Positions 1 through 48,051 of a DNA stretch of 64,000 nt are shown one piece after another. Location: the IMG/VR virus record IMGVR_UViG_3300032236_002285, positions 248,001 to 312,000 of that record, one strand, 5' to 3'. The number at the start of each line of letters is the position of its first letter. Position 1 is the first letter of the stretch. Under the pieces are notes generated by a model. The model had not been told where the DNA came from. It worked only from the letters and a program-made list of their open reading frames with translations, and did not search any database. The position numbers were made by a program, and so were the translations under genes.

Positions 1-122
1 GTATCTATAGATGAAAGTGATGATTCTAAGAAATATTCATATCATGTTAAAAGAGGATTTTTAAGAACTGATAAATGTTATATTAAGATAGCCCCTATAA
101 GAATAGAAATTCAATTAGCATA

Positions 123-647
123 ATGAAACATATAAAGACATATAAACTATTTGAAAGTATTGATACTGATAAAATTTATAATAACATAGATACTTCTGAT
201 AATGATGTTTATTATCAAATACCATTCCAATGGTTTTATGACGGTAAAGAATTTGGTGATGACTTTAAGTTATTTCTTGGTGAAAGATTTATTTATGATT
301 ACATAAAAGATGAAGAAATAACAAAAGAATTAGAATCTGATTTAAGTAATGTTGATTTAAGTAAAGGGTGGGAATCTGATACATTTCATTCTGGTGATAA
401 TAAAGATAACATACACACTAAAAGGATTGCTAAATTAGTTCAGTCATTACAAAATAATGAGCCACTAAGACCTATATCTTTTTGGGTATCAGAAAATAGT
501 TATATGCATGATTGTTATAATTTCATAGAAGATGGAAATCATAGGTTAAGAGCTTTACAGTATTTAGGTTATGATTATTTCCCAGCTTATGTTTATGGTT
601 CTCATGAGAAGTTTATTTTAGAAGAATTAAAAAAATTAAATAGTTAA
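123..647 (+). CDS. ParB/Srx-like N-terminal domain protein with capsid-targeting-like N-terminus
   Basis: IEDGNHRLRAL motif typical of the ParB/sulfiredoxin fold; begins MKHIKTYKLFES. Confidence 0.55.
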   Translation: MKHIKTYKLFESIDTDKIYNNIDTSDNDVYYQIPFQWFYDGKEFGDDFKLFLGERFIYDYIKDEEITKELESDLSNVDLSKGWESDTFHSGDNKDNIHTKRIAKLVQSLQNNEPLRPISFWVSENSYMHDCYNFIEDGNHRLRALQYLGYDYFPAYVYGSHEKFILEELKKLNS

Positions 648-658
648 TATATACTATA

Positions 659-1132
659 ATGAAACATCTAAAGACATACAAGATATTTGAAAATATTGAT
701 ACGATAATAAATGATCTTAAAGATATCTTATTAGAGTTACAAGATAAGAACTTTAACATACGAATTGCGAGTATTGAACATCATGCTGGTGAAAATGCCT
801 TAGATATAACTATATCTAAAGATGGTGGTAATTTTGATTTCTGGACAGAAAGTAATATAGGTGAACTCACACCTTTCAATTTTATTGAGGTTAAAGAGGA
901 TCTAATAAGATTATTAGAATATGCTAATAGTGAAGGATGGTATGACTTTAACTTTGAAATTATTACACCATCAAACACATTAAATGGTAGTAAAAAATTT
1001 AATGATGGTACATACCAAGCTTCGGTGGAAGTTAAAGGTGATGAGATTGTAACTAATTACAGTTGGAATCAAGGTGAACCAATTAAAGATGATGAAAAGA
1101 TCCTTTGTGTTTATATTGGATTGTTGAAATAA
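659..1132 (+). CDS. hypothetical protein, MKHLKTYKIFE family (putative head-internal protein)
   Basis: N-terminal tag plus DLKDILLELQD, shared with the next ORF; TAATATATA at 645-653. Confidence 0.6.
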   Translation: MKHLKTYKIFENIDTIINDLKDILLELQDKNFNIRIASIEHHAGENALDITISKDGGNFDFWTESNIGELTPFNFIEVKEDLIRLLEYANSEGWYDFNFEIITPSNTLNGSKKFNDGTYQASVEVKGDEIVTNYSWNQGEPIKDDEKILCVYIGLLK

Positions 1133-1143
1133 TATATACTCTA

Positions 1144-1536
1144 ATGAAACATCTAAAATCATATAAAGTATTTGAGTCAACTGAGACAGAGCAAGACTTA
1201 AAAGATATCCTACTTGAGCTACAAGATGAAGGATATAAAGTTATACATAATGATGATGTTATGTTAGGGGTTACTGGTGAACCAGGAAATATTAAAGCTA
1301 TCTGGGTAAGAGATGTTAATAATCCAAGTTATAGTGAAGGTAAAGATTGGGAAGAGTTAAGAGATTACGCTTTAAGAATTAAAGATTACTTAGGTGATAA
1401 GTATTTGAGCTTTGCTTGGAGACCTATTCTTTTAGGAAGTCAAGGTAAAGAAAATCCTTATCATACTGTTAAGTTAAATGAAGATACCCAAATAGATGAA
1501 AAAATATACTCATTCGTAATAAAATACAAAGAATAA
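1144..1536 (+). CDS. hypothetical protein, MKHLKSYKVFE family (paralog of 659..1132)
   Basis: Start moved from 1105 to ATG 1144, 5 nt after TAATATATA (1130-1138); shares DLKDILLELQD. Confidence 0.65.
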   Translation: MKHLKSYKVFESTETEQDLKDILLELQDEGYKVIHNDDVMLGVTGEPGNIKAIWVRDVNNPSYSEGKDWEELRDYALRIKDYLGDKYLSFAWRPILLGSQGKENPYHTVKLNEDTQIDEKIYSFVIKYKE

Positions 1537-1566
1537 AAAAGCCCTCTTAATGAGGGCTTTCTTTTT
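1535..1566. terminator. bidirectional intrinsic terminator
   Basis: AAAGCCCTC-ttaat-GAGGGCTTT flanked by A/T runs, between convergent genes. Confidence 0.8.
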
Positions 1567-4501
1567 ATCTTAATAAAGTGATATTACCTTTCTTATAGAA
1601 TCTCTTACCTTTATATGAATAAGCTTCTGCTTCATAAACATAAACACCAATCGGACAAGGCTCACCTTTAAATCTACCATCCCAGCCTTCATCTATATTC
1701 TTTGTTTCAAATACCATCTGACCCCATCTATTGAATATTCTAAAATGATCCAATGTAGCAATACCATGATGTTGTACTTTAATTATATCATTAGGTGAAG
1801 AACCCGGTGAAAAAGCATTAGCCACATCAATATAAGAATCATCTTCTACAATCACAACAACTGTATCAGTTACTTCACAACCATATTCTGTTTTAGCATT
1901 GACAGTATAAATAATACTAGATTGTACTGAAGTAATAGGTGATGATATACAAGGATTACTTAAACCATTAAGCGGAAACCAATTAAAGTATAAACAATTA
2001 CCACCTGGTGTAAATTGATATGATTCACCTGGATATAATCTAATCGTATCTGGTAGATTAATACTTGCTAAGTTTTTAATCTCTACATTTACAAGAGTAG
2101 AATCTATACAACCTGTTACTTCTTGTGCCACGACTAAATAAGTAAAATTACCTGGAGGCCATACTGTTGGCTCTTGAGCCGTATCACTACTAATATATAA
2201 ATTAGGGTACCAATGAATCCAAGTTAAAGGAGCGGCAAAAGTACTTAATAACTTAGTAGAATCTCCAGGACACAATGGTTTTATTCCTAAAGGTTGGAAA
2301 AAATTACTTGCAATTACCGTATAAGTCGCATCATCACTTCCATTACATCCGATTGGTGTTGTTACCGTTAAGTTAACATTTTGACTCAATACACTATTAA
2401 AGATTGGATTCGCTATTGATGGGTTATTAAACGCACCTGAAGGTGTCCAAGTGTAAGTGTAAAAAGGATATGTTCCTGGTGTTATTATTGGATCACATTG
2501 AATTGTATCACCATTACATATTGTTCTGTCCGCCCCAATAAACACAGTTGGATTTGGTTGAACATCAATATAGATTGTCTTAATTGAATCTTTACATCCT
2601 GTCTTGGTTGCTTTGATTGTATATAACCTTGAGGTGTCAGGTGTAATCGTTGGTGACATTATGTTTGGATTACTCACAAATAAATTAGGTGTCCATTTAT
2701 AAGTATAACGATTATCACCAGTTACATTTATGTTAACCGTATTACCCTTACAAATCGCAGTATCTTTATTGTTTAGTTTGAACCCTTGTAATACTTTTAT
2801 TTTCAATGTATCATAACGAGCACATTGATTTAATCCATTTGGAGTTATCTTAACAATATAAGTCGTATCTTTTGTAGGAGTACAAATTGGATTATTAATA
2901 GTATCCTTATTCAAAAAAGTTGAAGGAAACCATTTAACACTAAAAATTGTGTTAGCACTTGGAATTAAATTAGTATTCAATAATAACGAGTTATTGATAC
3001 AAGTTACAGTATCTGGTCCCAAATTGAATATCGGTATTGGTGATACTGTTACGGTAGTCGTATCTTTGTATTTATCACAAACACCCATCAAATTACTTGT
3101 AACCACATATTGAGTTGTTACAGTTGGATTAGCAAATGGAGCAGGACAATTAGTACAAGTTAATGAAGTCACAGGCGAACCACCAGGTAAAACTGACCAA
3201 GTGAATTGGGTACCACCAGCAACTTGCAACATAGCATAATCACCAATACATATTATTGGATATGTGGTGATATGAGTTTGTTGCCAAATATAAATTGGTA
3301 CAATAAATGTTTGTGATACAGGAATACCAGGAGGTGTACAAGTAGAATCTTTAATAGTAAATGTTAATATCCTTAAACCTGTATCAATTAATGAAGGAGA
3401 CCAATTAAAACAAGTTCTAACTGAATCTGTAAATGGATGAGTTGTAGTAAGTGTTGAACCAGGAGTGGTAATGCTATTATTAGATGATACAACTAATATA
3501 GCATTTGAATTAGTTGATTTGGCATCAAAACAAAATGATATTGTATGACCACCACATCCTTCTATTCTACCATTGTTCCAAGTACCACCTACAATAGATA
3601 CTGTATCTAAATTCAAGGTTGGTGGAGGGATGGTACAAGCTTTAACAATAATTTGTATATCTCTCATCACAGAACCTATTAACACACCATTTCTCCATTC
3701 TTTTACAAAAACAGTAACAACTGCAACTTGTTGAATGTTAGGTGTAAATGATATCTGTCCTGTTGTTGGACTAATAGTAAATGTATTGTTTGTACTTAAT
3801 GGGTTATTAGTTAAGTTATAGGTTACGGGTGGTGAAGTTGTGTTTGTAAATCCTATGTCTGAACCCGCAATAACATTACAACCGGCTGAACTTGTTTTTG
3901 GTTGAATTATAGAAAATGACATTGAATCGTTATTAGGGTCAACAGCGCCATTATTATAGTTGTATGGCATATTAACACAAAGATAAGGTACTGGTTTTAC
4001 GGTAAAATAAGGTGATGAATTACCTTGAGCATATTGATTGTTAAGCATTGCTTCAACATACATATTCTGAGTACCAGGTTGATATAAATTAGTAATGGCA
4101 TTATTTCTAGCACCTTCAGAAATATAAAATTTCCATGAATTACATCTTGAAGGCAGTGTGATTGTGTTTTCATATATCCACTCTCTATAACCAGGGAAGG
4201 TACCACCGTTACAAGTACTTGGGTAACCAGGACAACCGGTACTTACTTCTTGTCCATTGGTTGGACTTGTAATTTTACTGAGTGTTATGTTAGTACACCA
4301 ATTAGTACAAGGATTAAAACAATAACATAAAACATCACTGGGTTCTGGAATACCAGTACAATCTCTATAAAATTTGAATGTAATTTTATATGTTGAATCT
4401 GATATCCAACTATAAAGTAGTTCACCGCCAGCGCAGTGAGATGCTTTGCTCACGTTAGCAAAGGAAAGTAGCATAATTAATGCTAAGAGTAATCGTTTCA
4501 T
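1565..4501 (-). CDS. secreted T9SS type-B cargo (gliding motility-associated C-terminal domain, Ig/PKD-like repeats)
   Basis: Sec signal peptide; SHCAGGELLY..FYRDC N-terminus; C-terminal NAFSP..IFNRWGQMVF..GWDGRFKG..GVYVY..GNITLLR (CHU_C / type-B CTD). Confidence 0.85.
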   Translation of the reverse strand: MKRLLLALIMLLSFANVSKASHCAGGELLYSWISDSTYKITFKFYRDCTGIPEPSDVLCYCFNPCTNWCTNITLSKITSPTNGQEVSTGCPGYPSTCNGGTFPGYREWIYENTITLPSRCNSWKFYISEGARNNAITNLYQPGTQNMYVEAMLNNQYAQGNSSPYFTVKPVPYLCVNMPYNYNNGAVDPNNDSMSFSIIQPKTSSAGCNVIAGSDIGFTNTTSPPVTYNLTNNPLSTNNTFTISPTTGQISFTPNIQQVAVVTVFVKEWRNGVLIGSVMRDIQIIVKACTIPPPTLNLDTVSIVGGTWNNGRIEGCGGHTISFCFDAKSTNSNAILVVSSNNSITTPGSTLTTTHPFTDSVRTCFNWSPSLIDTGLRILTFTIKDSTCTPPGIPVSQTFIVPIYIWQQTHITTYPIICIGDYAMLQVAGGTQFTWSVLPGGSPVTSLTCTNCPAPFANPTVTTQYVVTSNLMGVCDKYKDTTTVTVSPIPIFNLGPDTVTCINNSLLLNTNLIPSANTIFSVKWFPSTFLNKDTINNPICTPTKDTTYIVKITPNGLNQCARYDTLKIKVLQGFKLNNKDTAICKGNTVNINVTGDNRYTYKWTPNLFVSNPNIMSPTITPDTSRLYTIKATKTGCKDSIKTIYIDVQPNPTVFIGADRTICNGDTIQCDPIITPGTYPFYTYTWTPSGAFNNPSIANPIFNSVLSQNVNLTVTTPIGCNGSDDATYTVIASNFFQPLGIKPLCPGDSTKLLSTFAAPLTWIHWYPNLYISSDTAQEPTVWPPGNFTYLVVAQEVTGCIDSTLVNVEIKNLASINLPDTIRLYPGESYQFTPGGNCLYFNWFPLNGLSNPCISSPITSVQSSIIYTVNAKTEYGCEVTDTVVVIVEDDSYIDVANAFSPGSSPNDIIKVQHHGIATLDHFRIFNRWGQMVFETKNIDEGWDGRFKGEPCPIGVYVYEAEAYSYKGKRFYKKGNITLLR

Positions 4502-4577
4502 ATTTAAGGTTTTACATAAAGTTATGACACTACCATGACAATTCCAAAAATTATTTTTTTATTTAATATATACTTTA

Positions 4578-4979
4578 ATGAAACACTTAAAGAAATATAA
4601 TGAATCTGATCAAGAATTCACATTCATAGACATTATTGATATCCTACAAGATATCATTGATGAAGGTCATGATATTGTTATTTATTCAGCTACAGGTAAT
4701 TATTATACACCTGAAGATATTAATAAAAGAGGTGTAGAAACTGAATTCAGGTTTCAGAGATATGCTAATGAAAATAAAAAGTCATTTAAGATTCAAATCA
4801 ACTTCAAGATGAGTTTAGAGTATAGTTATCTTGTTGATTTCTTTGATGAGATGAAAGTACCTATCGCCAGATTTGAAGATACTGGATTTTATCTAAGCCA
4901 TATGGAACCAAAAGTAACTGACGAATCGGATCTCTATCGTTGTTATGGGGTTTACTACAATTTTGAATCAGATAATTAA
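4578..4979 (+). CDS. hypothetical protein, MKHLKKYNES family
   Basis: N-terminal tag; TAATATATA at 4564-4572. Confidence 0.6.
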   Translation: MKHLKKYNESDQEFTFIDIIDILQDIIDEGHDIVIYSATGNYYTPEDINKRGVETEFRFQRYANENKKSFKIQINFKMSLEYSYLVDFFDEMKVPIARFEDTGFYLSHMEPKVTDESDLYRCYGVYYNFESDN

Positions 4980-4983
4980 TAAG

Positions 4984-5577
4984 CTATAATCCAGATTTTT
5001 CTAAACAATCCTTTAAGAAAACCTTTGCTTCTTCTGGTGTTAAATCATTAGCATCTTTTCCACTTGGTACGGTATAAGCAAAATCACCAGCTTTAATTAG
5101 TCTTCTACCAGCCGCATCATTATCATAAATAACAATCTTCTTTTGTATTAAAGTTTTTAACCAAGATTTTAGTGAATCACTTGGGTTATTACAAAGAACA
5201 GCTATAGCCGGATAACCAGCTTCTTGAATTCTAGCCGCATCAAATATACCTTCAGTTATAAATACAAACTCATCACTCATAACATCTAAAGATTCTAATC
5301 CCCAAACAGCAATCTTTTTACCTTTACCTTCATCAGAAACCCAAGTGAAATATTTAGCCATTCTTGGATCTTCTAAATTGGATTGACCTGTTTTTTGATA
5401 ATCAGGATTGTATTTTTGATAACCCACCATTTGACCAGACAGGTTGTAAAGAAAGAAATAAGAATCTCCAGTATCTTCATCCATAATGACTCTAGTCTTC
5501 GTAGGATCAACGCCACGACCTTTTAGATGGTCTGTTAGACTACCTTCAAATTCTTCATATAGTTTTAAATATCTCAT
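4984..5577 (-). CDS. Toprim-domain (DnaG primase core-like) protein with N-terminal tag
   Basis: VFITEGIFDA and IYDNDAAG Toprim motifs; begins MRYLKLYEEFE; late motif at 5582-5590. Confidence 0.7.
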   Translation of the reverse strand: MRYLKLYEEFEGSLTDHLKGRGVDPTKTRVIMDEDTGDSYFFLYNLSGQMVGYQKYNPDYQKTGQSNLEDPRMAKYFTWVSDEGKGKKIAVWGLESLDVMSDEFVFITEGIFDAARIQEAGYPAIAVLCNNPSDSLKSWLKTLIQKKIVIYDNDAAGRRLIKAGDFAYTVPSGKDANDLTPEEAKVFLKDCLEKSGL

Positions 5578-5654
5578 AGTGTATATATTAATTTTAAATT
5601 AATACAAACTGGATGTATATACATTTATATATACTAAAAATATAATCTTACGAT

Positions 5655-5849
5655 ATGGCAGCACCTAAAGACAAAATGTTCTCACTACGAATTCCTGAAA
5701 AACTCTTAAATGAATATAGAGAGTTTTGTGAAGAAAATTCTATTAACATTTCTATGAGATTAAGAAAATTTATTGAAAGAGACCTTGAGGGTTATAGGGC
5801 TAAAAAGCTTCAACAACAAATACAAAGAAAAAATAATAATCAATCTTAA
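5655..5849 (+). CDS. ribbon-helix-helix (CopG/Arc-like) DNA-binding protein
   Basis: MFSLRIPEKLLNEYREFCEENSINISMRLRKFIE beta-helix-helix pattern. Confidence 0.6.
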   Translation: MAAPKDKMFSLRIPEKLLNEYREFCEENSINISMRLRKFIERDLEGYRAKKLQQQIQRKNNNQS

Positions 5850-5859
5850 TATATAGATT

Positions 5860-6903
5860 ATGAGATATATTAAAACATACGAGTCATATAAAACTAACAA
5901 ACTTCTTCAAGAAGATTTTGACAGAAAGATAACTATTCTACATAATGTAGAATTAGATGGTACAGATGAAGAACTTTTTAGAAGAATTTTTGACAAAGTT
6001 GTTGAATCTATCAAAGATGAATCTATTAAACAAGAAATCAAGAATTATGTTTCTGAAAATCAATTACTAAATGAAGGATTTTTTGATAAATTAAAAGAAA
6101 GATTTCCTAAAGCGGCTCAAGTTTCTAAATCACTTTCGGATAAAGCTGAAGGTATTTTAAGTAATATCTTACAAAAGGTTAAAGATGCTGTTTCTTTTGT
6201 TAAAAAGATTACTGAAGGTATATCAGAGTTTTTCAAAATGGCTATTGAAAAAGGTAAAGCTTTTTATATTGAGCAATTGAAAACTGGTCAGTTAAAATCA
6301 AAAGTAGATGAATTAGTTAAAACTAAAAAAGAAGGTCTGAAGACTGATTTATTTACAATTGAAAGTGTTCTTAATTTTTATAGAGTAGATTTTATGGGTA
6401 AGATTAATAATACTATTACAACCAATCTTACTAACTTCTTAAATAAAGAACAAACTCCAATTGCAGAATCTATGTTAAATGAAGGTGGTAATGTTATTTC
6501 TACTTTAGTTCATGGTATTGAAGCTATTCCACCATTCTCTTGGTTGGAAGCCCTTGCTAAATCTGGTGAAAAGGGTGCTGCCGCAGTTATTGCTGCTTTA
6601 AGCTCTTTAACTCAAAAATTAGGTGGTCATGCTTTTCAACTTCCAGTTGTTGCTATTTTAATTGGTTTACTTATAGAACAAATCATTAAAGGCCAAGCAG
6701 GTCACTGGTTATTAGAATTAGCTGGTCCTACTCCACTAGGAATGGCAATTAAAGGTATTAAAATGACAGCTTCTATAATAGCACTTATTGTTGCCATTGA
6801 TTCTGTTGTTGGTGGTCAATTGGGTATTGTTAATAATCATCACGATGACCACACCGAACACGGTGAACATGCAGAAACTGAGACTACTGAAAACACAGCA
6901 TAA
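5860..6903 (+). CDS. putative head-internal/ejection protein with hydrophobic C-terminal helices
   Basis: MRYIKTYES tag, repeated LLxE/LNE sites, hydrophobic C-terminal third, late motif at 5847-5855. Confidence 0.5.
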   Translation: MRYIKTYESYKTNKLLQEDFDRKITILHNVELDGTDEELFRRIFDKVVESIKDESIKQEIKNYVSENQLLNEGFFDKLKERFPKAAQVSKSLSDKAEGILSNILQKVKDAVSFVKKITEGISEFFKMAIEKGKAFYIEQLKTGQLKSKVDELVKTKKEGLKTDLFTIESVLNFYRVDFMGKINNTITTNLTNFLNKEQTPIAESMLNEGGNVISTLVHGIEAIPPFSWLEALAKSGEKGAAAVIAALSSLTQKLGGHAFQLPVVAILIGLLIEQIIKGQAGHWLLELAGPTPLGMAIKGIKMTASIIALIVAIDSVVGGQLGIVNNHHDDHTEHGEHAETETTENTA

Positions 6904-6905
6904 AT

Positions 6906-6937
6906 AAAAAGAGGAAGTTAAAAACTTCCTCTTTTTT
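6906..6937. terminator. bidirectional intrinsic terminator
   Basis: AAAAAGAGGAAGT-taaaa-ACTTCCTCTTTTT. Confidence 0.8.
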
Positions 6938-7271
6938 ATCTTATTAAAGTAACATAACCTTTTTGAGCCATCATAGTTCCATCACAATCATATGTGATAT
7001 ACCAGTTATAAATTCCTAAATCTTGAACAACTCCATTAAAAGTTCCATCCCATCTTTTATCATTTAATTGAGATTCAAAAACGGTTTGACCCCATTTATT
7101 TTTAATTATAAAATTTAATATTTTATAATGATTACCAATTGGTCCAAAGGAATCGTTTTTACCATCATTATTTGGTGTAAAAGCGGATGGTAATGATAAA
7201 ACACAAGATTGAGATCTACCTAAATTAATAACACCTATTAAAAGCGCTATCATAAGCAATGTTTTTTTCAT
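6936..7271 (-). CDS. stand-alone T9SS type-B C-terminal domain with signal peptide
   Basis: Signal peptide followed directly by LPSAFTPNNDGKNDSF..NKWGQTVF..WDGTFNG..GIYNW..GYVTLIR. Confidence 0.85.
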   Translation of the reverse strand: MKKTLLMIALLIGVINLGRSQSCVLSLPSAFTPNNDGKNDSFGPIGNHYKILNFIIKNKWGQTVFESQLNDKRWDGTFNGVVQDLGIYNWYITYDCDGTMMAQKGYVTLIR

Positions 7272-7364: not shown

Positions 7365-7504
7365 TATCTTTGTATAACAAAACGAAAAAATAAATTACAA
7401 ATTAAAAAAAGATTAAAAAAGATTAAAAAAATTAGGTAGAATTAAAACTTTTTCTTAATTTTGTATAAAATAAGTCAAAAGGGACAAAAACTTTTTAATA
7501 TATA
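7365..7504 (+). promoter_or_regulatory. promoter block of tRNA operon 1: two Bacteroidota sigma70-type -7 boxes and a late motif
   Basis: TATCTTTG 7365-7372, TAATTTTG 7456-7463, TAATATATA 7496-7504; 7441-7504 closely matches 23022-23086. Confidence 0.7.
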
Positions 7505-7509
7505 CAACA

Positions 7510-7617
7510 ATGACAACAATGAATTTAAATATGAATATGAATCTAACGGTGGTGCTTAATACATTATGTATTAGACGCTCTGAGGGCTTCGTCATATCTA
7601 AACGATTTGTTGACTAA
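7510..7617 (+). CDS. attenuator leader peptide 1, MTTMNLNMNMNLTVVLNTLCIRRSEGFVISKRFVD
   Basis: ATG 5 nt after the late motif; TAA at 7615-7617; overlaps the antiterminator strand 7579-7591. Confidence 0.7.
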   Translation: MTTMNLNMNMNLTVVLNTLCIRRSEGFVISKRFVD

Positions 7618-7697: not shown

Positions 7698-7769
7698 GGG
7701 GTGGTAGCTTAATGGTGAAGCAATCGGCTGTTAACCGATAGATTATAGGTTCGAATCCTATCCACCCCG
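7698..7769 (+). tRNA. tRNA-Asn(GTT)
   Basis: GGGGTGG/CCACCCC acceptor; ATCGG-CTGTTAA-CCGAT; TTCGAAT T-loop. Confidence 0.9.
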
Positions 7770-7780
7770 CAAAAATAAAC

Positions 7781-7865
7781 TGGTAGGTACCCGAGCGGTC
7801 TTCAGGGACTAGTCTGATATACTAGGTGAGAAATCACGACGTGGGTTCAAATCCCACCCTACCAA
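7781..7865 (+). tRNA. tRNA-Ile(GAT) with long variable arm
   Basis: TGGTAGG/CCTACCA; CTAGT-CTGATAT-ACTAG; variable hairpin GTGA-GAAA-TCAC. Confidence 0.8.
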
Positions 7866-7871
7866 CAACAT

Positions 7872-7943
7872 TCACTGGTAGCTCAGAGGCAGAGCAACCG
7901 CCTGTTAAGCGGTAGGTCGGGATATCGTAATTCACCCAGTGAG
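7872..7943 (+). tRNA. tRNA-Asn(GTT), irregular T-arm
   Basis: TCACTGG/CCAGTGA, G73; CCGC-CTGTTAA-GCGG; T-stem poorly paired. Confidence 0.75.
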
Positions 7944-7949
7944 CAAAAC

Positions 7950-8028
7950 GCCTCAGTAGCCGAGGTCGCCTTCTAAGCGACTAATCGTAACGGAACTGAA
8001 AATGTAGGTTCGAATCCTACCTGGGGTA
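7950..8028 (+). tRNA. atypical tRNA-Arg(TCT): D-arm nearly absent, long variable region
   Basis: GCCTCAG/CTGGGGT; GTCGC-CTTCTAA-GCGAC; GTAGG-TTCGAAT-CCTAC. Confidence 0.65.
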
Positions 8029-8083
8029 CAAAAAAAAGGGACACTAGTCTTATTAATATATAAGTAAAATGTAGGTTTGTATT

Positions 8084-8914
8084 ATGTTAGACTTTGAAAA
8101 TATTCAAAAAGACTTTGAAAGTGGTCTTTTTTATCAAAAAGATATACTAATTAAGTATAGTATATCAATTAAAAAATTAAGAACTTTTGTAAAAAAAGGT
8201 TTATTGAATAAAGAAAATTGGAAATTAAAAAAATATGAAGTAAAAAGAGAAACAAAAAAGTTAATATCAGAAGGTAGAAAAAAATGGTTGAAAGAAAATA
8301 CATCTAAACATCCTTGGAGAAATGGAAATAAATCTAAGCCTTGTGAGGAGTTTAAGAAATTCTTAAAAAGTAGGAATATTTTCTTTTTGGAAGAGGTTAT
8401 GATTTCAAAAGAAAGATTCTATTCGGTTGATATTTTAATACCTGAGTTCACTTCGGTTGTAGAAATTAATGGTAATCAACATTATAAATCTAATGGAGAA
8501 CTTAAAGATTACTATAGTGAAAGAAATAGTTTTATAAAAAATAAAGGATGGTCGATATATGAAGTACACTACTCAATTGTTTATAATTTAGAAATGTGTG
8601 ATTCTATTTTAGAAAATATTAAAAATAATAATAAAATCGATATACCATTTTATATAAAAAATAAGAAAGAAAAAAAATATAAGAATAGGGAAGAGTACTG
8701 GAATAAAAGAAAAATTAATAAATTGAATAGTTATAGTGAAAGATTAAATGAATTAAAAAACAGTAGTATAGATTTTAAAAAGATTGGATGGGTTAAACTA
8801 GCATCTGAGATATTAAAAGTTAAAAATGTAAATAAACTATTAAAAGAAATCGATCCAGAATTTTATAAAAATTGTTATAAAAGAAAACAAAATGCCGAGG
8901 TGGTGGAATGGTAG
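8084..8914 (+). CDS. DUF559/Vsr-like PD-(D/E)XK homing endonuclease inserted in tRNA array
   Basis: FYSVDILIP..VVEINGNQHY..RNSFI..GWSIYEVHY; Lys-rich; last 21 nt overlap tRNA-Leu. Confidence 0.7.
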   Translation: MLDFENIQKDFESGLFYQKDILIKYSISIKKLRTFVKKGLLNKENWKLKKYEVKRETKKLISEGRKKWLKENTSKHPWRNGNKSKPCEEFKKFLKSRNIFFLEEVMISKERFYSVDILIPEFTSVVEINGNQHYKSNGELKDYYSERNSFIKNKGWSIYEVHYSIVYNLEMCDSILENIKNNNKIDIPFYIKNKKEKKYKNREEYWNKRKINKLNSYSERLNELKNSSIDFKKIGWVKLASEILKVKNVNKLLKEIDPEFYKNCYKRKQNAEVVEW

Positions 8915-8976
8915 ACACGCTAGCCTTAGAAGCTAGTACCCGCAAGGGTGTGTGGGTTCGAGTCCCACCCTCGGTA
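8894..8976 (+). tRNA. tRNA-Leu(TAG)
   Basis: GCCGAGG/CCTCGGT; CTAGC-CTTAGAA-GCTAG; type II variable arm. Confidence 0.9.
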
Positions 8977-9001
8977 CTGAAGTGAAACGAAAGTTCACTA
9001 C
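8977..9001 (+). repeat. 25-nt tRNA-Leu 3' trailer, copy 1
   Basis: CTGAAGTGAAACGAAAGTTCACTAC, identical to 9810-9834; GAAA-capped hairpin. Confidence 0.9.
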
Positions 9002-9010
9002 AAAAAAAAT

Positions 9011-9096
9011 TGATAGGTTGCCGTAGTGGCCGAACGGTCCGGACTGTTAATCCGGTGACGAATAGTCCATCGTGGGTTCGAATCCCACCCTGTCAG
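9011..9096 (+). tRNA. tRNA-Asn(GTT) with long variable region
   Basis: TGATAGG/CCTGTCA, G73; CCGGA-CTGTTAA-TCCGG. Confidence 0.8.
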
Positions 9097-9103
9097 CAAA
9101 TAT

Positions 9104-9175
9104 AGTCCTGTAGCTTAATGGGAAAGCGCTTGCCTTACATGCAAGAGAGAGTCGGATCGTTACCGACCAGGACTA
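9104..9175 (+). tRNA. tRNA-Val(TAC)
   Basis: AGTCCTG/CAGGACT; CTTGC-CTTACAT-GCAAG; T-loop ATCGTTA. Confidence 0.85.
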
Positions 9176-9181
9176 CAAAAT

Positions 9182-9255
9182 TGGACTGTAGCTCATTTGG
9201 TTAGAGCGCCACGCTGATACCGTGGAGGTGGTCGGATCGTAACCGACCAGTCCAA
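9182..9255 (+). tRNA. tRNA-Ile(GAT)
   Basis: TGGACTG/CAGTCCA; CCACG-CTGATAC-CGTGG; T-loop ATCGTAA. Confidence 0.85.
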
Positions 9256-9261
9256 CAACAA

Positions 9262-9345
9262 GGTACTATGGCCGAGTGGAGTCTTTAAGACGGGAGGCAG
9301 TGGTCTGCAAAACTTCTCACACTGGTTCGAATCCAGTTAGTACCT
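9262..9345 (+). tRNA. tRNA-Cys(GCA) with expanded D-loop
   Basis: GGTACTA/TAGTACC, U73; loop CTGCAAA; extra GTCT-TTA-AGAC hairpin in the D-loop. Confidence 0.75.
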
Positions 9346-9350
9346 CAAAC

Positions 9351-9422
9351 GCTTCTTAAGCATTAATGGTGATGCACTAGTCTTGTAAACTAGAGAAATC
9401 GGATCGTTACCGGTAAGAAGCT
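9351..9422 (+). tRNA. tRNA-Thr(TGT)
   Basis: GCTTCTT/AAGAAGC; CTAGT-CTTGTAA-ACTAG. Confidence 0.85.
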
Positions 9423-9428
9423 CTAAAT

Positions 9429-9500
9429 TGTTCTGTAGCTCAATGGTAGAGCGCTTCTGTGACATGGAAGAGGTAGTCGGATCGTTACCGACCAGGACAA
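9429..9500 (+). tRNA. tRNA-Val(GAC)
   Basis: TGTTCTG/CAGGACA; CTTCT-GTGACAT-GGAAG. Confidence 0.8.
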
Positions 9501-9525
9501 CAAAATAATGGATGGTGATTAAGAG

Positions 9526-9598
9526 TGTTACTTCGTGAAATGGTATACACATTTGTCTTAAAAACAAACTTTTGAGGGTTCAAGTCCCTCAGTAAAAT
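9526..9598 (+). tRNA. degenerate tRNA-Leu(TAA)-like element lacking the variable arm
   Basis: Leu-type D-arm GTGAAATGGTATACAC; TTTGT-CTTAAAA-ACAAA; GAGGG-TTCAAGT-CCCTC; acceptor stem has a mismatch. Confidence 0.55.
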
Positions 9599-9625
9599 CA
9601 CTCTTTGAACTTTCCTCCATTATAT

Positions 9626-9709
9626 GCCGATGTGGCTCAGTGGCGACAGCACTGGTTTTGTAAACCAGAGACGAATAGTCCAACGGGGGTTCGAGTCCCT
9701 CCATCGGCT
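9626..9709 (+). tRNA. tRNA-Thr(TGT) with long variable region
   Basis: GCCGATG/CATCGGC; CTGGT-TTTGTAA-ACCAG. Confidence 0.85.
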
Positions 9710-9724
9710 CAAAATAAATCACCT

Positions 9725-9809
9725 GCCTGGGTGGTGGAACGGTAGACACGCTGGACTTAAAATCCAGTGGGCAGTAATGCCCGTGAGGGTTCGAGTCCCT
9801 CTCCAGGTA
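9725..9809 (+). tRNA. tRNA-Leu(TAA)
   Basis: GCCTGGG/TCCAGGT; CTGGA-CTTAAAA-TCCAG; type II arm. Confidence 0.9.
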
Positions 9810-9834
9810 CTGAAGTGAAACGAAAGTTCACTAC
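9810..9834 (+). repeat. 25-nt tRNA-Leu 3' trailer, copy 2
   Basis: Identical to 8977-9001. Confidence 0.9.
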
Positions 9835-9840
9835 TAAATT

Positions 9841-9911
9841 ATTGGGATAGTTTAATGGTAAATCGTGGGCCTGATATGCCCGTGTTCTTGGTTCGATTCC
9901 AGGTCTCAATA
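9841..9911 (+). tRNA. tRNA-Ile(GAT)
   Basis: ATTGGGA/TCTCAAT; TGGGC-CTGATAT-GCCCG. Confidence 0.8.
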
Positions 9912-9916
9912 CAAAC

Positions 9917-9988
9917 TTCGATATGGCCTATTGGTAGGGTGCAGGGGGACATGTTCCTGAGGACTTGGTTCGATTCCAGGTATCGATA
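9917..9988 (+). tRNA. tRNA-like element, anticodon undetermined (8-nt loop GGACATGT)
   Basis: Acceptor, D- and T-arms present (CTTGG-TTCGATT-CCAGG); non-canonical anticodon loop. Confidence 0.5.
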
Positions 9989-9995
9989 CAAACAT

Positions 9996-10082
9996 CGCGG
10001 GGTAGAGTAGAGGTCAAACTCACTGGGCTCATAACCCAGGGTTGCGCAAGTGACACGTCAGGTTCGAATCCTGCCCCCGCTA
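9996..10082 (+). tRNA. initiator-type tRNA-Met(CAT) with long variable arm
   Basis: Unpaired C1:U72; three consecutive G-C pairs in CTGGG-CTCATAA-CCCAG; extra GTTGC-GCAA-GTGAC hairpin. Confidence 0.8.
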
Positions 10083-10088
10083 CAACAA

Positions 10089-10161
10089 GCAGTCATCGTA
10101 TAGTAGGTGATTACACCACCTTGGTACGGTGGAGATTCCGGTTCGAATCCGGGTGATTGCT
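10089..10161 (+). tRNA. tRNA-Thr(GGT)
   Basis: GCAGTCA/TGATTGC; CCACC-TTGGTAC-GGTGG. Confidence 0.85.
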
Positions 10162-10166
10162 CAAAT

Positions 10167-10247
10167 GCCCAGATGGTGGAATGGTATACACGCCAGTCTA
10201 AGAAGCTGGTTCCTTCGGGATTGAGAGTTCGAGTCTCTCTCTGGGCA
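10167..10247 (+). tRNA. tRNA-Leu(AAG)
   Basis: GCCCAGA/TCTGGGC; CCAGT-CTAAGAA-GCTGG; Leu-type D-arm and variable arm. Confidence 0.85.
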
Positions 10248-10255
10248 CAACATAC

Positions 10256-10340
10256 GCCGGTGTGATCCGATGTGGTAATGGAGTTCGGCTCATATCCGAA
10301 TTGGTTTATCCTATTGCTGGTTCGACTCCAGCCACCGGTA
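10256..10340 (+). tRNA. tRNA-CAT (elongator Met or lysidine Ile2), long variable region
   Basis: GCCGGTG/CACCGGT; TTCGG-CTCATAT-CCGAA. Confidence 0.75.
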
Positions 10341-10345
10341 CAAAT

Positions 10346-10426
10346 GTCAGAATGGTGGAATGGTATACACGCTAGTTTCAAAAACTAGTGCCGAAAGGTA
10401 TGAGAGTTCAAATCTCTCTTCTGATA
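10346..10426 (+). tRNA. tRNA-Leu(CAA)
   Basis: GTCAGAA/TTCTGAT; CTAGT-TTCAAAA-ACTAG. Confidence 0.88.
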
Positions 10427-10448
10427 CTCGATAAAATAAAAAATAAAA

Positions 10449-23257: not shown

Positions 23258-23329
23258 AGTCCGTGGGTATGTTGGTATGAATAACCTCCTGTCACGGGGA
23301 AGAAGCCGGTTCGATTCCGGTACGGACTG
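23258..23329 (+). tRNA. tRNA-Asp(GTC)
   Basis: AGTCCGT/ACGGACT, G73; loop CTGTCAC. Confidence 0.85.
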
Positions 23330-23334
23330 CAAAA

Positions 23335-23408
23335 CGAGAAGTGACTAAGGTTTTAAGCACGCGCCGTCTGGAGCGGTGAGTTAGCAGGTTCGATTCCTGT
23401 CTTCTCGA
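23335..23408 (+). tRNA. tRNA-Pro(TGG)-like with atypical anticodon loop
   Basis: C1:G72 and A73 (CGAGAAG/CTTCTCG-A); CGCCG-TCTGGAG-CGGTG has C33 and A37. Confidence 0.6.
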
Positions 23409-23471
23409 CAACAAGTAGCTTTTGAGGCGAAAAATACTCTTTAGAGAATAGAGTAAAACAATTCTCAAAAT

Positions 23472-23544
23472 GGTCTCGTGGTTGAATGGTTACAATACCA
23501 CCCTGTCACGGTGCGAGATGCCGGTTCGATTCCGGTCGAGACCG
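23472..23544 (+). tRNA. tRNA-Asp(GTC)
   Basis: GGTCTCG/CGAGACC, G73; loop CTGTCAC. Confidence 0.9.
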
Positions 23545-23549
23545 CAAAA

Positions 23550-23620
23550 GGACATATAGCTTAAAAGGAAAGAGTACCTCCAGTGGGAGGGGAGTCTTGG
23601 TTCAAGTCCAGGTATGTCCG
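23550..23620 (+). tRNA. tRNA-like element, anticodon undetermined (shortened loop)
   Basis: GGACATA/TATGTCC, G73; D- and T-arms intact; CCTCC-AGTG-GGAGG. Confidence 0.5.
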
Positions 23621-23626
23621 CAAAAA

Positions 23627-23698
23627 GGTCTATTAGGGTAGTGGTTATCCTTCCCGACTGTCTATCGGGAGACACCGGTTCGAATCCGGTATAGACCG
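23627..23698 (+). tRNA. tRNA-Asp(GTC)
   Basis: GGTCTAT/ATAGACC; CCCGA-CTGTCTA-TCGGG. Confidence 0.88.
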
Positions 23699-23745
23699 CA
23701 AATGGGCTTTTCAAGACAAAAAGTTTGTAGATTACTTAATGAAAC

Positions 23746-23820
23746 GGTCTAGTGGTGAAGTGGCTATCATATCTGCCTGTCACGCAGAAGTAGAGGGATC
23801 GAAACCCTTCTAGACCGCCA
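23746..23820 (+). tRNA. tRNA-Asp(GTC), CCA encoded
   Basis: GGTCTAG/CTAGACC-GCCA; TCTGC-CTGTCAC-GCAGA. Confidence 0.9.
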
Positions 23821-23826
23821 AAAATT

Positions 23827-23901
23827 CGGGGTGTAGCGTAGTCCGGTTATCGCGCATGCTTTGGGAGCATGAAATCGTAGGTTCGAATCCTGCCACCCCG
23901 A
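23827..23901 (+). tRNA. tRNA-Pro(TGG)
   Basis: CGGGGTG/CACCCCG-A; CATGC-TTTGGGA-GCATG. Confidence 0.92.
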
Positions 23902-23932
23902 CAAAGAAACAAAATATTAATAAATAGAAATT

Positions 23933-23986
23933 ATGAGAACAACAACACAATACCAGCAACAACAACAAATTAATCCAACGGATTGA
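23933..23986 (+). CDS. attenuator leader peptide 3, MRTTTQYQQQQQINPTD
   Basis: Six Gln codons (CAA x5, CAG x1) in 17; TGA lies inside segment 2 of a 1:2/2:3/3:4 hairpin set. Confidence 0.85.
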   Translation: MRTTTQYQQQQQINPTD

Positions 23987-24014
23987 TAACGGTATCGTAT
24001 TGTCTAAACTTTAC

Positions 24015-24048
24015 AAACCCTATTCAATCTGATTGAGTAGGGTTTTTT
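24015..24048 (+). terminator. attenuator terminator upstream of tRNA-Gln x3 and glnS
   Basis: AAACCCTATTCAA-tctga-TTGAGTAGGGTTT plus T-run, ending 2 nt before tRNA-Gln. Confidence 0.88.
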
Positions 24049-24050
24049 AT

Positions 24051-24121
24051 TGTCTGATGGTGTAGTGGTAGCACAAGGGTCTTTGATCCCCTTAGTTCAG
24101 GTCCGATTCCTGATCAGACAA
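24051..24121 (+). tRNA. tRNA-Gln(TTG)
   Basis: TGTCTGA/TCAGACA; loop CTTTGAT; T-loop TCCGATT. Confidence 0.8.
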
Positions 24122-24128
24122 CAAATAT

Positions 24129-24210
24129 TGAGGAATAGAATAATGGCAGTTCACCCGCCTTTGAAGCGGAGAGAGAAATCTCAGTGTAGGTTCGAGTCCT
24201 ACTTCCTCAA
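24129..24210 (+). tRNA. tRNA-Gln(TTG) with long variable arm
   Basis: TGAGGAA/TTCCTCA; CCGC-CTTTGAA-GCGG; GAGA-GAAA-TCTC arm. Confidence 0.82.
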
Positions 24211-24216
24211 CAAAAT

Positions 24217-24288
24217 TGCTTTATAGTATATGGGTTAACATATCTGTCTTTGAAACAGATGAACTTGGTTCGAGTCCAAGTGGAGCAA
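24217..24288 (+). tRNA. tRNA-Gln(TTG)
   Basis: TGCTTTA/TGGAGCA; TCTGT-CTTTGAA-ACAGA. Confidence 0.85.
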
Positions 24289-24306
24289 CAAAAAATAATA
24301 ACTACT

Positions 24307-36642: not shown

Positions 36643-38775
<2,133 letters not shown>

Positions 38776-39451: not shown

Positions 39452-39462
39452 GTAAAATAGTA

Positions 39463-41836: not shown

Positions 41837-41838
41837 AT

Positions 41839-43637: not shown

Positions 43638-43648
43638 AAATATTAAAA

Positions 43649-44167: not shown

Positions 44168-44176
44168 AATTAAAAT

Positions 44177-47044: not shown

Positions 47045-47052
47045 AAATTAAA

Positions 47053-48045: not shown

Positions 48046-48051
48046 ATTATT

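What the first reader, a model, noticed from the sequence alone, without database searches (positions are those of the whole stretch)
1565..4501. Phage-encoded 978-aa T9SS type-B cargo (SprB-like surface protein)
Seen: signal peptide, Cys-paired N-terminal domain, Ig/PKD-like repeats and a complete type-B CTD. Established: type-B CTD proteins, such as the gliding adhesin SprB, are exported by the Bacteroidota T9SS with a PorP/SprF-like partner. Inference: the phage displays its own adhesin on the infected cell, which could alter adhesion, motility or susceptibility to competing phages.
Basis: partly seen in the sequence, partly recalled or inferred. Interest (0 to 1): 0.72.

Follow-up and report, generated by a model that had tools for sequence, protein, structure and literature searches.

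The report
Huge phage carries captured host surface proteins
A 476-kb phage of freshwater Chitinophagaceae bacteria carries an intact, selected copy of a host surface protein that leaves the cell through the host's type IX secretion system. It is one of three such captured genes, so the phage probably re-dresses the surface of the cell it infects.

Summary
Window 1565-4501 (-) is an intact 978-aa ORF with a signal peptide, a Cys-rich N-terminal module, Ig-like domains and a complete T9SS type-B CTD. PF13585 scores 47.6 bits and TIGR04131 36.8 bits, both above cut-off.

The record is a real contractile-tailed huge phage: TerL, portal, major head protein, tail sheath and 27 tRNAs in the window.

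The protein is not SprB-like beyond its CTD class. It is a full-length member of a ~980-aa family of Chitinophagaceae, whose chromosomal copies follow purB-rsmF-LysM-GT9.

The phage holds two copies, A (this ORF) and B, 48% identical. Each groups with different bacterial syntenic copies, and a single phage clade is rejected (AU p = 0.0001). A third, unrelated type-B cargo is 81% identical to a bacterial gene.

The phage copies have phage-like codon composition, keep every family-invariant residue, and evolve under purifying selection (dN/dS 0.12-0.25).

The phage has no PorP/SprF shuttle, while donor-lineage genomes have 6-8. A predicted complex of the phage CTD with an orphan host-lineage shuttle scores 0.87, against 0.00 for the controls.

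Most likely the gene is a moron-like cassette whose product is displayed on the infected cell through the host's machinery. Its purpose is unproven; exclusion of other phages, or altered adhesion, are the candidates. No expression data were found.

The parts
1565..4501 (-). Gene A: the 978-aa T9SS type-B cargo. It is a captured member of a ~980-aa Chitinophagaceae surface-protein family.
   Evidence: ORF. Family membership at full length, 44-87% identity. Purifying selection, dN/dS 0.12-0.25.
4442..4501 (-). Sec-type signal peptide (aa 1-20), with a likely cut after VSKA.
   Evidence: Read from the sequence. AF2 gives a helix at 2-12 and low pLDDT at 12-19. No predictor was run.
3632..4441 (-). 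N-terminal Cys-rich two-sandwich module (aa 21-290). It is the end furthest from the C-terminal anchor.
   Evidence: Separate AF2 model with pLDDT 90 and pTM 0.86. No solved-structure match (TM<0.3). AFDB matches to other bacterial CHU_C proteins and to the 'Integrin beta-like protein A-E N-terminal domain' (TM 0.56-0.76). Invariant H22, A24, G25 and cysteines.
1847..3631 (-). Chain of about seven Ig-like beta-sandwich domains (aa 291-885) with conserved Cys pairs.
   Evidence: AF2 model with pLDDT 85.6, all-beta. The best PDB matches are Ig-rod proteins such as Aureispira GhpA 9flp/9fly. Homologs carry PF19081, PF18911 and PF22352.
1568..1846 (-). T9SS type-B C-terminal sorting domain (aa 886-978); the stop codon is at 1565-1567.
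   Evidence: PF13585 47.6 bits; TIGR04131 36.8 bits. Predicted to dock on an orphan PorP/SprF-like protein of the donor lineage, ipSAE 0.87 against 0.00 for the best control.
4517..4548 (-). Promoter-like site of Bacteroidota type: TTTG, 20 nt, TAACTTTA, ending 16 nt before the ATG.
   Evidence: Read from the sequence and compared with the TTTG / TAnnTTTG consensus that I recall from the literature. Not tested. The sigma-70 scan found nothing better here.
1535..1563 (.). G+C-rich hairpin with T runs on both strands, directly after the stop codon. It is a bidirectional terminator-like site shared with the convergent ORF 1141-1536.
   Evidence: Terminator scan: 12-bp stem on the minus strand and 9-bp stem on the plus strand.
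6936..7271 (-). Companion ORF of 111 aa made only of a signal peptide plus a type-B CTD. It also lies inverted relative to its neighbours.
   Evidence: PF13585 53.7 bits and TIGR04131 43 bits, covering aa 26-111. Similar mini-proteins occur in other viral contigs.

Best explanation
Gene A is a host gene captured by a huge phage and kept as a self-contained cassette, with its own promoter-like site and terminator, inverted inside an array of phage ORFans.

In an infected Chitinophagaceae cell the proposed steps are:
1. The protein is made and crosses the inner membrane by Sec, through its signal peptide.
2. Its type-B CTD is recognised by the host T9SS.
3. It is handed to a host PorP/SprF-type shuttle. 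The phage brings none, so this is most likely the 'orphan' shuttle that serves the host's own ortholog.
4. It ends up on the cell surface as an Ig-domain rod, with the Cys-rich N-terminal module at the tip.

It uses the same export and anchoring slots as the host ortholog, so it supplements or displaces that ortholog. Together with paralog B, a third captured type-B cargo and a signal-peptide-plus-CTD mini-protein, it changes the surface coat of the infected cell. The consequence I think most likely is altered recognition of the cell: exclusion of other phages, or changed adhesion.

What is shown and what is inferred:
- Shown: gene integrity, phage location, host origin, two separate captures, purifying selection, absence of a phage shuttle, and presence of host shuttles.
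- Predicted only: CTD-shuttle docking.
- Inferred: expression, secretion, display and purpose.
For: Intact ORF with a signal peptide and a complete type-B CTD.

Real phage: TerL, portal, major head protein, tail sheath, tRNA arrays.

Host origin:
- Full-length orthologs lie in Chitinophagaceae chromosomes, in conserved purB-rsmF-LysM-GT9 synteny.
- No phage locus has these neighbours.
- Clade A (this gene plus 6-9 metagenomic relatives, of which those checked have phage-like contexts) is sister to the bacterial syntenic copies P0007/L020/L021.
- Paralog B is sister to the bacterial P0067 at 72% identity.
- A single phage clade is rejected (delta lnL 592, p-AU 0.0001).
- A third cargo is 81% identical to a bacterial chromosomal gene.

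Kept for function:
- dN/dS is 0.12 (91%-identical phage copy), 0.17 and 0.25.
- All 80 invariant family columns are kept.
- Every domain is conserved to a similar degree.
- GC3 is 0.17, fully phage-like.

Cassette behaviour:
- Similarity to three other phage contigs stops at the gene's ends.
- The gene is in inverted orientation and has a terminator.

Machinery:
- No PF11751 in the phage; 6-8 per donor-lineage genome.
- gldL, gldM and gldN lie on the contig of B's nearest bacterial relative.
- In MAG G001 the ortholog is an orphan cargo and there is one orphan shuttle.
- Phage CTD plus that shuttle scores ipSAE 0.87 against 0.00 for the best control. That mark was reached by 51 of 78 solved complexes and 2 of 108 mismatched pairs.

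Established knowledge: type-B CTDs need PorP/SprF-like shuttles, orphan CTDs share an orphan shuttle, and similar CTDs cross-talk (PMC12618676, PMC9143113).
Against: - There is no expression or proteomic evidence. No RNA run was listed.
- The host is not identified, so CTD-shuttle compatibility in the real host is unknown. CTD identity to the nearest bacterial copies is only 60-71%, and type-B CTD-shuttle pairing is reported to be specific (PMC12618676).
- The complex prediction cannot tell which member of the shuttle family binds, and it may reflect memory of solved relatives.
- The promoter assignment is my reading of a recalled consensus.
- The function of the bacterial family itself is unknown, so the purpose is a guess.
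Confidence: 0.6

Rival explanations
1. Exclusion by receptor swap. This is a specific version of the main idea. The host ortholog is a receptor for this phage or for competitors. The phage expresses diverged orthologs taken from other lineages. They take over the shared shuttle and surface slots, so the infected cell loses adsorption sites. The CTD-only mini-protein adds to the blockade.
For: - Two separate captures of the same family from different bacterial lineages sit in one genome.
- The phage copies are only 66-72% identical to the nearest bacterial copies.
- There is no phage shuttle, so sharing the host's is obligatory.
- Mini-proteins of signal peptide plus CTD recur in viral contigs.
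- The same window has a large glycan-synthesis cluster, which fits surface remodelling.
- Bellas et al. suggested superinfection-related roles for phage T9SS cargo (PMC7468147).
Against: - Nothing shows that the family is a phage receptor.
- The bacterial orthologs evolve under purifying selection, not diversifying selection (dN/dS 0.085-0.16).
- No domain of the phage copies stands out as fast-evolving.
Confidence: 0.25
2. Auxiliary gene that sustains a host function. During a long huge-phage infection that shuts down host expression, the phage copy replaces the decaying host protein. Adhesion, gliding or nutrient capture at the surface then continues until lysis.
For: - The copy is full length, keeps every invariant residue and is under purifying selection, like the bacterial orthologs.
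- The family is conserved in a housekeeping neighbourhood.
- Three different surface cargos were captured.
Against: - One copy close to the host's would be enough. Instead there are two copies 48% identical to each other, from different lineages.
- Surface proteins are usually stable over one infection cycle.
- The function of the family is unknown.
Confidence: 0.2
3. Virion component. The Ig-domain rod decorates the capsid or serves as a fibre, as Ig-like domains do on many phage particles.
For: Ig-like domains are common on phage structural proteins (my knowledge). The model is a rod of Ig-like domains.
Against: - A cleavable signal peptide and a complete, conserved T9SS CTD send the protein out of the cytoplasm, where virions assemble.
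- The gene lies among ORFans, a primase and tRNAs, about 180 kb or more from the structural genes found (C1:27-64 kb).
- It is an ortholog of chromosomal bacterial genes.
Confidence: 0.03
4. Artefact or dead cargo: an assembly chimera with host DNA, or a recently acquired passenger with no function in the phage.
For: IMG/VR classes the record as 'provirus'. The gene is clearly of bacterial origin.
Against: - The gene lies 249 kb into a 476-kb record, with phage genes on both sides.
- GC3 is 0.17, like the phage and unlike any bacterial copy.
- An independent Logan assembly has one 33.6-kb contig across the whole stretch with 0 differences, though that run may be the source sample.
- The clade is kept in at least three other phage-like contigs down to 60% identity, with dN/dS of 0.12-0.25.
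Confidence: 0.03

Closest known systems
Unnamed ~980-aa 'gliding motility-associated C-terminal domain' protein family of Chitinophagaceae (Flavipsychrobacter, Taibaiella, strains MMS25-I14, IBVUCB1, LGM1), encoded after purB-rsmF-LysM-GT9
   Same: Colinear over the full length at 44-66% identity. Same signal peptide, N-module, Ig-domain and type-B CTD architecture. All invariant residues are shared.
   Different: The phage copies lack the chromosomal synteny, have phage codon composition, and sit as single-gene cassettes in changing contexts. The function of the bacterial family is unknown.
'Cryophage' T9SS cargo genes (Bellas et al. 2020, PMC7468147)
   Same: Phage-encoded proteins that carry a T9SS sorting domain and are presumed to hijack the host T9SS. 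They are variable between phage variants, and a role in competition or superinfection was suggested.
   Different: The Cryophage genes carry type-A CTDs (PorV route, LPS anchoring) on enzymes or PA14 proteins. Here the CTD is type B and needs a PorP/SprF-type shuttle. The cargo is a whole captured host surface protein, captured repeatedly.
Orphan type-B CTD substrates of Flavobacterium johnsoniae (Fjoh_1123, Fjoh_1720, Fjoh_4934) and their shared shuttle Fjoh_1677 (Paillat et al. 2025, PMC12618676)
   Same: Type-B cargo encoded without an adjacent porP/sprF-like gene, and so dependent on a shuttle encoded elsewhere. In donor-lineage MAG G001 the ortholog is such an orphan, and exactly one shuttle is an orphan. 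Docking is predicted.
   Different: There is no sequence relationship outside the CTD. Shuttle use here is predicted, not shown.
SprB, the gliding adhesin of F. johnsoniae, with SprF (Gorasia et al. 2022, PMC9143113)
   Same: Cell-surface protein with a type-B CTD that binds a PorP-like outer-membrane protein.
   Different: SprB is several times larger (my recollection) and is built of SprB repeats. This protein has no SprB-repeat hit, is 978 aa, and has no sprF-like neighbour. It is not an SprB homolog outside the CTD.
GhpA grappling-hook protein of Aureispira (PDB 9flp, 9fly)
   Same: Best solved-structure match: a string of small Ig-like domains (Foldseek E 6e-26).
   Different: TM-scores are below 0.2 over the whole chain and identity is 14-15%. 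The resemblance is one of generic Ig-rod architecture. The N-terminal module has no solved counterpart.

Membership tests
T9SS type-B CTD cargo (TIGR04131 / PF13585) | A type-B sorting domain at the extreme C-terminus that scores above the curated cut-offs | tested here: met
   PF13585 47.6 bits (cut-off 27), aa 892-975, profile 2-85 of 86. TIGR04131 36.8 bits (cut-off 35), aa 892-978. The TIGR04131 margin is narrow.
T9SS type-B CTD cargo (TIGR04131 / PF13585) | N-terminal Sec signal peptide | tested here: met
   Read from the sequence: positive n-region, hydrophobic core, VSKA|S site. AF2 gives helix 2-12 and then a low-confidence linker. All homologs start the same way. No SignalP-type tool was available.
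T9SS type-B CTD cargo (TIGR04131 / PF13585) | A producing cell that has a T9SS | tested here: inconclusive
   The real host is unknown. The contig of paralog B's nearest bacterial relative carries gldL, gldM and gldN. All relatives are Bacteroidota of the Chitinophagaceae type.
T9SS type-B CTD cargo (TIGR04131 / PF13585) | A PorP/SprF-like shuttle or anchor partner | tested here: inconclusive
   None in the phage (PF11751, E<=1). There are 6-8 in each of three donor-lineage genomes. The predicted complex with the orphan shuttle of G001 scores ipSAE 0.87 against 0.00 for the best control; that mark was reached by 51 of 78 solved complexes and 2 of 108 mismatched pairs. This is a prediction only.
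T9SS type-B CTD cargo (TIGR04131 / PF13585) | T9SS-dependent export and surface localisation | not testable with these tools
   This needs expression in wild-type and T9SS-mutant cells.
SprB-type gliding adhesin | SprB repeats (PF13573) making up a very large protein | tested here: not met
   No SprB-repeat hit at E<=0.1. The protein is 978 aa.
SprB-type gliding adhesin | Genetic linkage to sprF or another porP-like gene | tested here: not met
   No PF11751 anywhere in the 476-kb record. The bacterial orthologs also have none within 10 kb.
Chitinophagaceae ~980-aa syntenic CHU_C family | Full-length colinear homology with the family-invariant residues retained | tested here: met
   100% query coverage at 44-87% identity. 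There are 80 invariant columns, including H22, A24, G25 and the Cys set, shared by phage and bacterial rows.
Chitinophagaceae ~980-aa syntenic CHU_C family | Chromosomal position after purB-rsmF-LysM-GT9 | tested here: not met
   35 of 78 bacterial loci have GT9 (with or without the others) upstream. The window, L006, L010, L014 and L018 do not. This is expected for a captured copy.
Phage moron / auxiliary gene cassette | A self-contained unit of non-phage origin, with similarity between phages confined to the gene and under selection in the phage | tested here: met
   Nucleotide similarity to L006, L010 and L014 ends at the gene borders. The gene is inverted, with a terminator hairpin. dN/dS is 0.12-0.25. 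One contig in run X4 appears to join 1533 to 4576 without the gene; this evidence is weak.

The most novel reading that the evidence does not exclude
The phage runs a T9SS-directed takeover of the host surface. It brings several type-B cargos captured from different Chitinophagaceae lineages, plus a cargo-less mini-protein of signal peptide and CTD, but no shuttle. Together they out-compete the host's own type-B cargos for the limited PorP/SprF shuttles. The cell's native surface proteins, including phage receptors or gliding adhesins, are replaced within one infection cycle. That would be a new mode of superinfection exclusion or host manipulation acting at the level of secretion-signal competition. 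Mini-CTD proteins in other viral contigs would be its minimal form.
Probability: 0.15. Interest if true: 0.8.

Novelty: new variant of a known kind. Interest (0 to 1): 0.5.

Why it matters
Phage-encoded T9SS cargo has been reported once in the library I could search. That report was for type-A CTDs, and it was called a unique occurrence (PMC7468147).

This case differs in four ways:
- A huge phage carries whole host surface proteins of the type-B class.
- The same family was captured twice, independently, and a second family as well.
- All copies are under purifying selection.
- The phage has no shuttle of its own.

This gives a natural experiment on an open question in T9SS biology: how type-B CTDs are matched to PorP/SprF shuttles, and how much cross-talk is tolerated (PMC12618676). 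It also points to cell-surface remodelling through the T9SS as a phage strategy in Bacteroidota.

The captured genes also help predict the host. The nearest relatives are low-GC freshwater Chitinophagaceae MAGs, at 66-81% identity.

The scan of IMG/VR found about 88 viral stretches with type-B CTD relatives. The phenomenon is therefore probably widespread and under-described rather than unique to this phage.

Tried and rejected
- SprB homology is rejected. There are no SprB repeats and the family is different.
- A phage-encoded PorP/SprF was searched for at E<=1 and not found.
- HK97-type capsid model PF05065 gave no hit. The major head protein was then found through PHROGs.
- GenBank phage records hold only three weak matches, at 23-33% identity. 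Two are 634-642-kb metagenomic phages. There is no close named relative.
- The fold search of the whole model returned only generic Ig-rod proteins. The N-terminal module has no solved counterpart, so no binding specificity could be inferred.
- A per-domain identity comparison looked for a fast-evolving or specially conserved domain in the phage copies. Nothing was clear-cut. The C-terminal half of paralog B is more diverged than its N-terminal half.
- Expression: no RNA run was listed.
- Read-level junction check: only Logan contigs were available, and the one full-length run may be the source sample. This supports the assembly but is not independent of it.
- The neighbouring ORFans gave no Pfam hits.
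- The virion-component and chimera readings were considered and rejected for the reasons given under the rival explanations.
Full report
WHAT IS THERE

Window 1565-4501 (minus strand) is an uninterrupted ATG-started ORF of 978 aa. Its last ~90 residues match the type-B T9SS sorting domain over the whole profile. PF13585 scores 47.6 bits against a cut-off of 27, and TIGR04131 scores 36.8 bits against 35.

The first 20 residues read as a Sec signal peptide.

An AlphaFold2 model built on 52 family members is confident (mean pLDDT 85.6) and entirely beta. It has three parts:
- a Cys-rich N-terminal module (aa 21-290);
- about seven small Ig-like domains;
- the CTD.

IS IT REALLY PHAGE DNA?

The window is bases 248,001-312,000 of a single 476,236-bp IMG/VR record with 30% G+C. 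CheckV rates it 97% complete. The record encodes:
- a large terminase;
- a 1,296-aa tail sheath, a portal and a major head protein;
- a gp32-like SSB, a primase, an RNA ligase, RNR and a Lon-like protease.

The window alone holds 27 tRNA genes.

The gene lies between phage ORFans and a primase fragment, far from either end. IMG/VR labels the record 'provirus'. The 111-aa protein from this window is recorded on a 481,145-bp contig. I infer that about 5 kb was trimmed from one end, not that the phage is integrated.

A chimera is unlikely, for three reasons:
- The gene's third-position G+C is 0.17, like the phage. Bacterial orthologs have 0.23-0.69, each matching its own flanks.
- A 33.6-kb Logan contig from run X1 covers window 1-6000 with no differences. 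That run may be the source sample.
- Homologs lie in three other phage-like contigs.

WHERE THE GENE CAME FROM

The protein is a full-length member of a large family of ~980-aa proteins, with 100% coverage at 44-87% identity.

The species-representative genome scan returned 431 relatives. Nearly all come from Chitinophagaceae-type genomes: Flavipsychrobacter, Taibaiella soli, and strains MMS25-I14, IBVUCB1 and LGM1. Some genomes hold several copies.

In bacteria the copies closest to the phage's sit in a conserved housekeeping neighbourhood: purB - rsmF - LysM protein - GT9 glycosyltransferase - this gene. A second CHU_C gene often follows. Of 78 bacterial loci, 35 have this upstream synteny. 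None of the phage loci does.

The phage genome holds a second full-length copy, paralog B (C1:233836-236799, 987 aa). It is only 48% identical to copy A.

The trees place the two copies apart:
- Copy A groups with 6-9 metagenomic proteins. The two of these whose contigs I inspected look phage-like. This clade is sister to the bacterial syntenic copies P0007/L020/L021, at 65-67% identity.
- Copy B is sister to P0067, which is 72% identical and bacterial, with gldLMN on the same contig.

Forcing all phage copies into one clade costs 592 log-likelihood units (p-AU 0.0001). I named that group after seeing a first tree.

The simplest reading is two separate captures from two bacterial lineages.

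A third, unrelated type-B cargo (C1:320982-323789, 935 aa; PKD and Ig_7 domains) is 81% identical to a gene in an ordinary bacterial neighbourhood.

The record also has the 111-aa signal-peptide-plus-CTD ORF (window 6936-7271) and a 208-aa signal-peptide-plus-type-A-CTD ORF at its last bases.

IS IT KEPT FOR A FUNCTION?

- Between phage copies, dN/dS is 0.12 (91% identity), 0.17 (77%) and 0.25 (61%). Bacterial pairs give 0.085-0.16.
- All 80 columns that are invariant in the 52-sequence alignment are shared by the phage rows.
- Every domain, including the signal peptide region and the CTD, is retained. Identity is broadly even across them.
- Nucleotide similarity between this phage and the three other phage contigs begins and ends at the gene.
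- The gene is inverted relative to the array of small paralogous ORFs around it. A bidirectional terminator hairpin follows it.
- Upstream there is TTTG-N20-TAACTTTA. I read this as a Bacteroidota-type promoter from the consensus I recall. This is my inference.
- In run X4, from another study, one low-depth contig appears to join 1533 to 4576, skipping exactly this cassette. The evidence is weak.

Together these are the hallmarks of a moron-like cassette under selection.

HOW IT MOST LIKELY WORKS

Established knowledge:
- Type-B CTD proteins cross the inner membrane by Sec and the outer membrane by the T9SS.
- They need a PorP/SprF-like outer-membrane shuttle, to which they stay bound on the surface (PMC9143113).
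- In F. johnsoniae, CTDs and shuttles form cognate pairs.
- Cargos encoded without a neighbouring shuttle share one orphan shuttle, and similar CTDs can cross-talk (PMC12618676).

Here:
- The phage has no PF11751 gene.
- Three donor-lineage genomes have 6-8 each.
- The 1.9-Mb MAG G001 carries the nearest bacterial relative of copy A. It has 17 CHU_C ORFs and 7 shuttles. Six shuttles are adjacent to a cargo, and one (contig 40) is an orphan.
- The ortholog of copy A in that MAG is an orphan cargo.

The last 99 residues of copy A were co-folded with that orphan shuttle. The score was ipSAE 0.87 in three runs, against 0.00 for the best of three controls. In the tool's calibration that mark was reached by 51 of 78 solved complexes and 2 of 108 mismatched pairs. 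This supports docking on a shuttle of this family. It cannot say which member binds.

I therefore propose that the phage protein is exported and displayed with host machinery, in the slots used by the host ortholog.

WHAT FOR?

This is the weakest step, because the function of the bacterial family is unknown.

The N-terminal module, which would be the distal tip, has no solved counterpart. It resembles only other uncharacterised bacterial CHU_C proteins and the N-terminal domain of Dictyostelium integrin-beta-like Sib proteins in AlphaFold DB (TM 0.56-0.76). The rod resembles Ig-domain adhesins such as Aureispira GhpA only generically.

Several facts make remodelling of the cell surface the most economical reading:
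- two diverged captures of one family, plus a third cargo;
- a cargo-less CTD;
- an 11-kb glycan-synthesis cluster in the same window (GT2, GT11 x2, GT17, a galactosyltransferase and two sugar epimerase/dehydratases).

Exclusion of other phages by receptor replacement, and maintenance or alteration of adhesion, are the two leading purposes. A virion role is contradicted by the secretion signals.

COMPARISON AND NOVELTY

The protein is a member of the type-B cargo class and of the Chitinophagaceae ~980-aa family. It is not an SprB homolog.

Phage-borne T9SS cargo was described for 'Cryophage', with type-A CTDs, and was called unique there (PMC7468147). I found no paper on phage type-B cargo.

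It is not rare in data. A scan of IMG/VR with the family alignment found 88 viral stretches with a relative. Most share only the CTD, and they include several mini-proteins of 107-190 aa. I did not verify that each of these contigs is a true phage.

I rate this a new variant of a known kind. The interest is moderate. It lies mainly in the repeated capture and the dependence on host shuttles, which make CTD-shuttle specificity and phage manipulation of the Bacteroidota surface testable.

LIMITS

- There is no expression data.
- The host is not identified.
- There is no signal-peptide predictor result.
- The complex is a prediction.
- Logan contigs cannot prove the junctions independently.
- The context of several clade-A relatives on short contigs was not inspected.

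Noticed in passing
window 6936-7271 (-): A 111-aa ORF made only of a signal peptide and a complete type-B CTD (PF13585 53.7 bits), inverted relative to its neighbours. Similar signal-peptide-plus-CTD mini-proteins of 107-190 aa occur in other IMG/VR contigs, for example L184 (107 aa, 47% identical) and L150 (125 aa, in a contig that shares 11 ORFs with this phage). It could be a competitor for T9SS shuttles.
   Followed up: partly
G000:C1:233836-236799 (+), outside the window (L018:5836-8799): A second full-length paralog (B, 987 aa) of the same family. It is 48% identical to the studied gene and 72% identical to a bacterial syntenic copy. It was captured independently (AU p 0.0001).
   Followed up: yes
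G000:C1:320982-323789 (+), outside the window (L019:8982-11789): A third type-B cargo (935 aa; PKD, Ig_7, CHU_C; N-terminal ~340 aa unassigned) from a different Chitinophagaceae family. It is 81% identical to a gene in a normal bacterial neighbourhood, which is the best clue to the host.
   Followed up: partly
G000:C1:475610-476236 (-): A 208-aa signal-peptide protein with a type-A CTD (Por_Secre_tail, 27.4 bits, just over the cut-off). The virus record ends exactly at its start codon, which suggests the 'provirus' trimming was done at a gene border.
   Followed up: no
window 100-690, 1121-1187, 4555-4609, 5555-5591, 5846-5882, 7495-7513: An array of small paralogous ORFans whose products start MKHLKTYK.FE / MRYLK.YE. 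Each is preceded by the motif TTAATATATACTnTAATG, which abuts the start codon, so it is probably a phage promoter or leader element. They have no Pfam hits. The same short elements recur in related contigs of other runs.
   Followed up: partly
window 1533 / 4576: In run X4 (a different study) one low-depth contig joins 1533 to 4576, skipping exactly the cargo gene. This may be a presence/absence polymorphism of the cassette. A joint made through the repeated start motifs is also possible.
   Followed up: no
window 7698-10427 and 23258-24289: Two tRNA arrays with 27 genes in total. There are multiple copies for Leu, Ile, Thr, Asp and Gln. Two have abnormal anticodon loops (9917-9989 and 23550-23621), and several are unusually long (85-87 nt) for Asn, Ile, Met and Thr.
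   Followed up: no
window 38867-49503 (+): A co-directional glycan-synthesis cluster: a galactosyltransferase, GT2, DUF5672, two GT11 (fucosyltransferase-type), GT17, and two NAD-dependent sugar epimerase/dehydratases. It suggests the phage also alters surface polysaccharide or glycosylation.
   Followed up: partly
window 36643-38775 (+): A 710-aa Lon-like ATP-dependent protease (phrog_4871, E 3e-249).
   Followed up: no
L005, L007, L008, L015 (bacterial loci): In many Chitinophagaceae the ortholog is followed directly by a second, larger CHU_C protein (1,063-1,424 aa). The pair may work together. The phage did not take the second gene.
   Followed up: no
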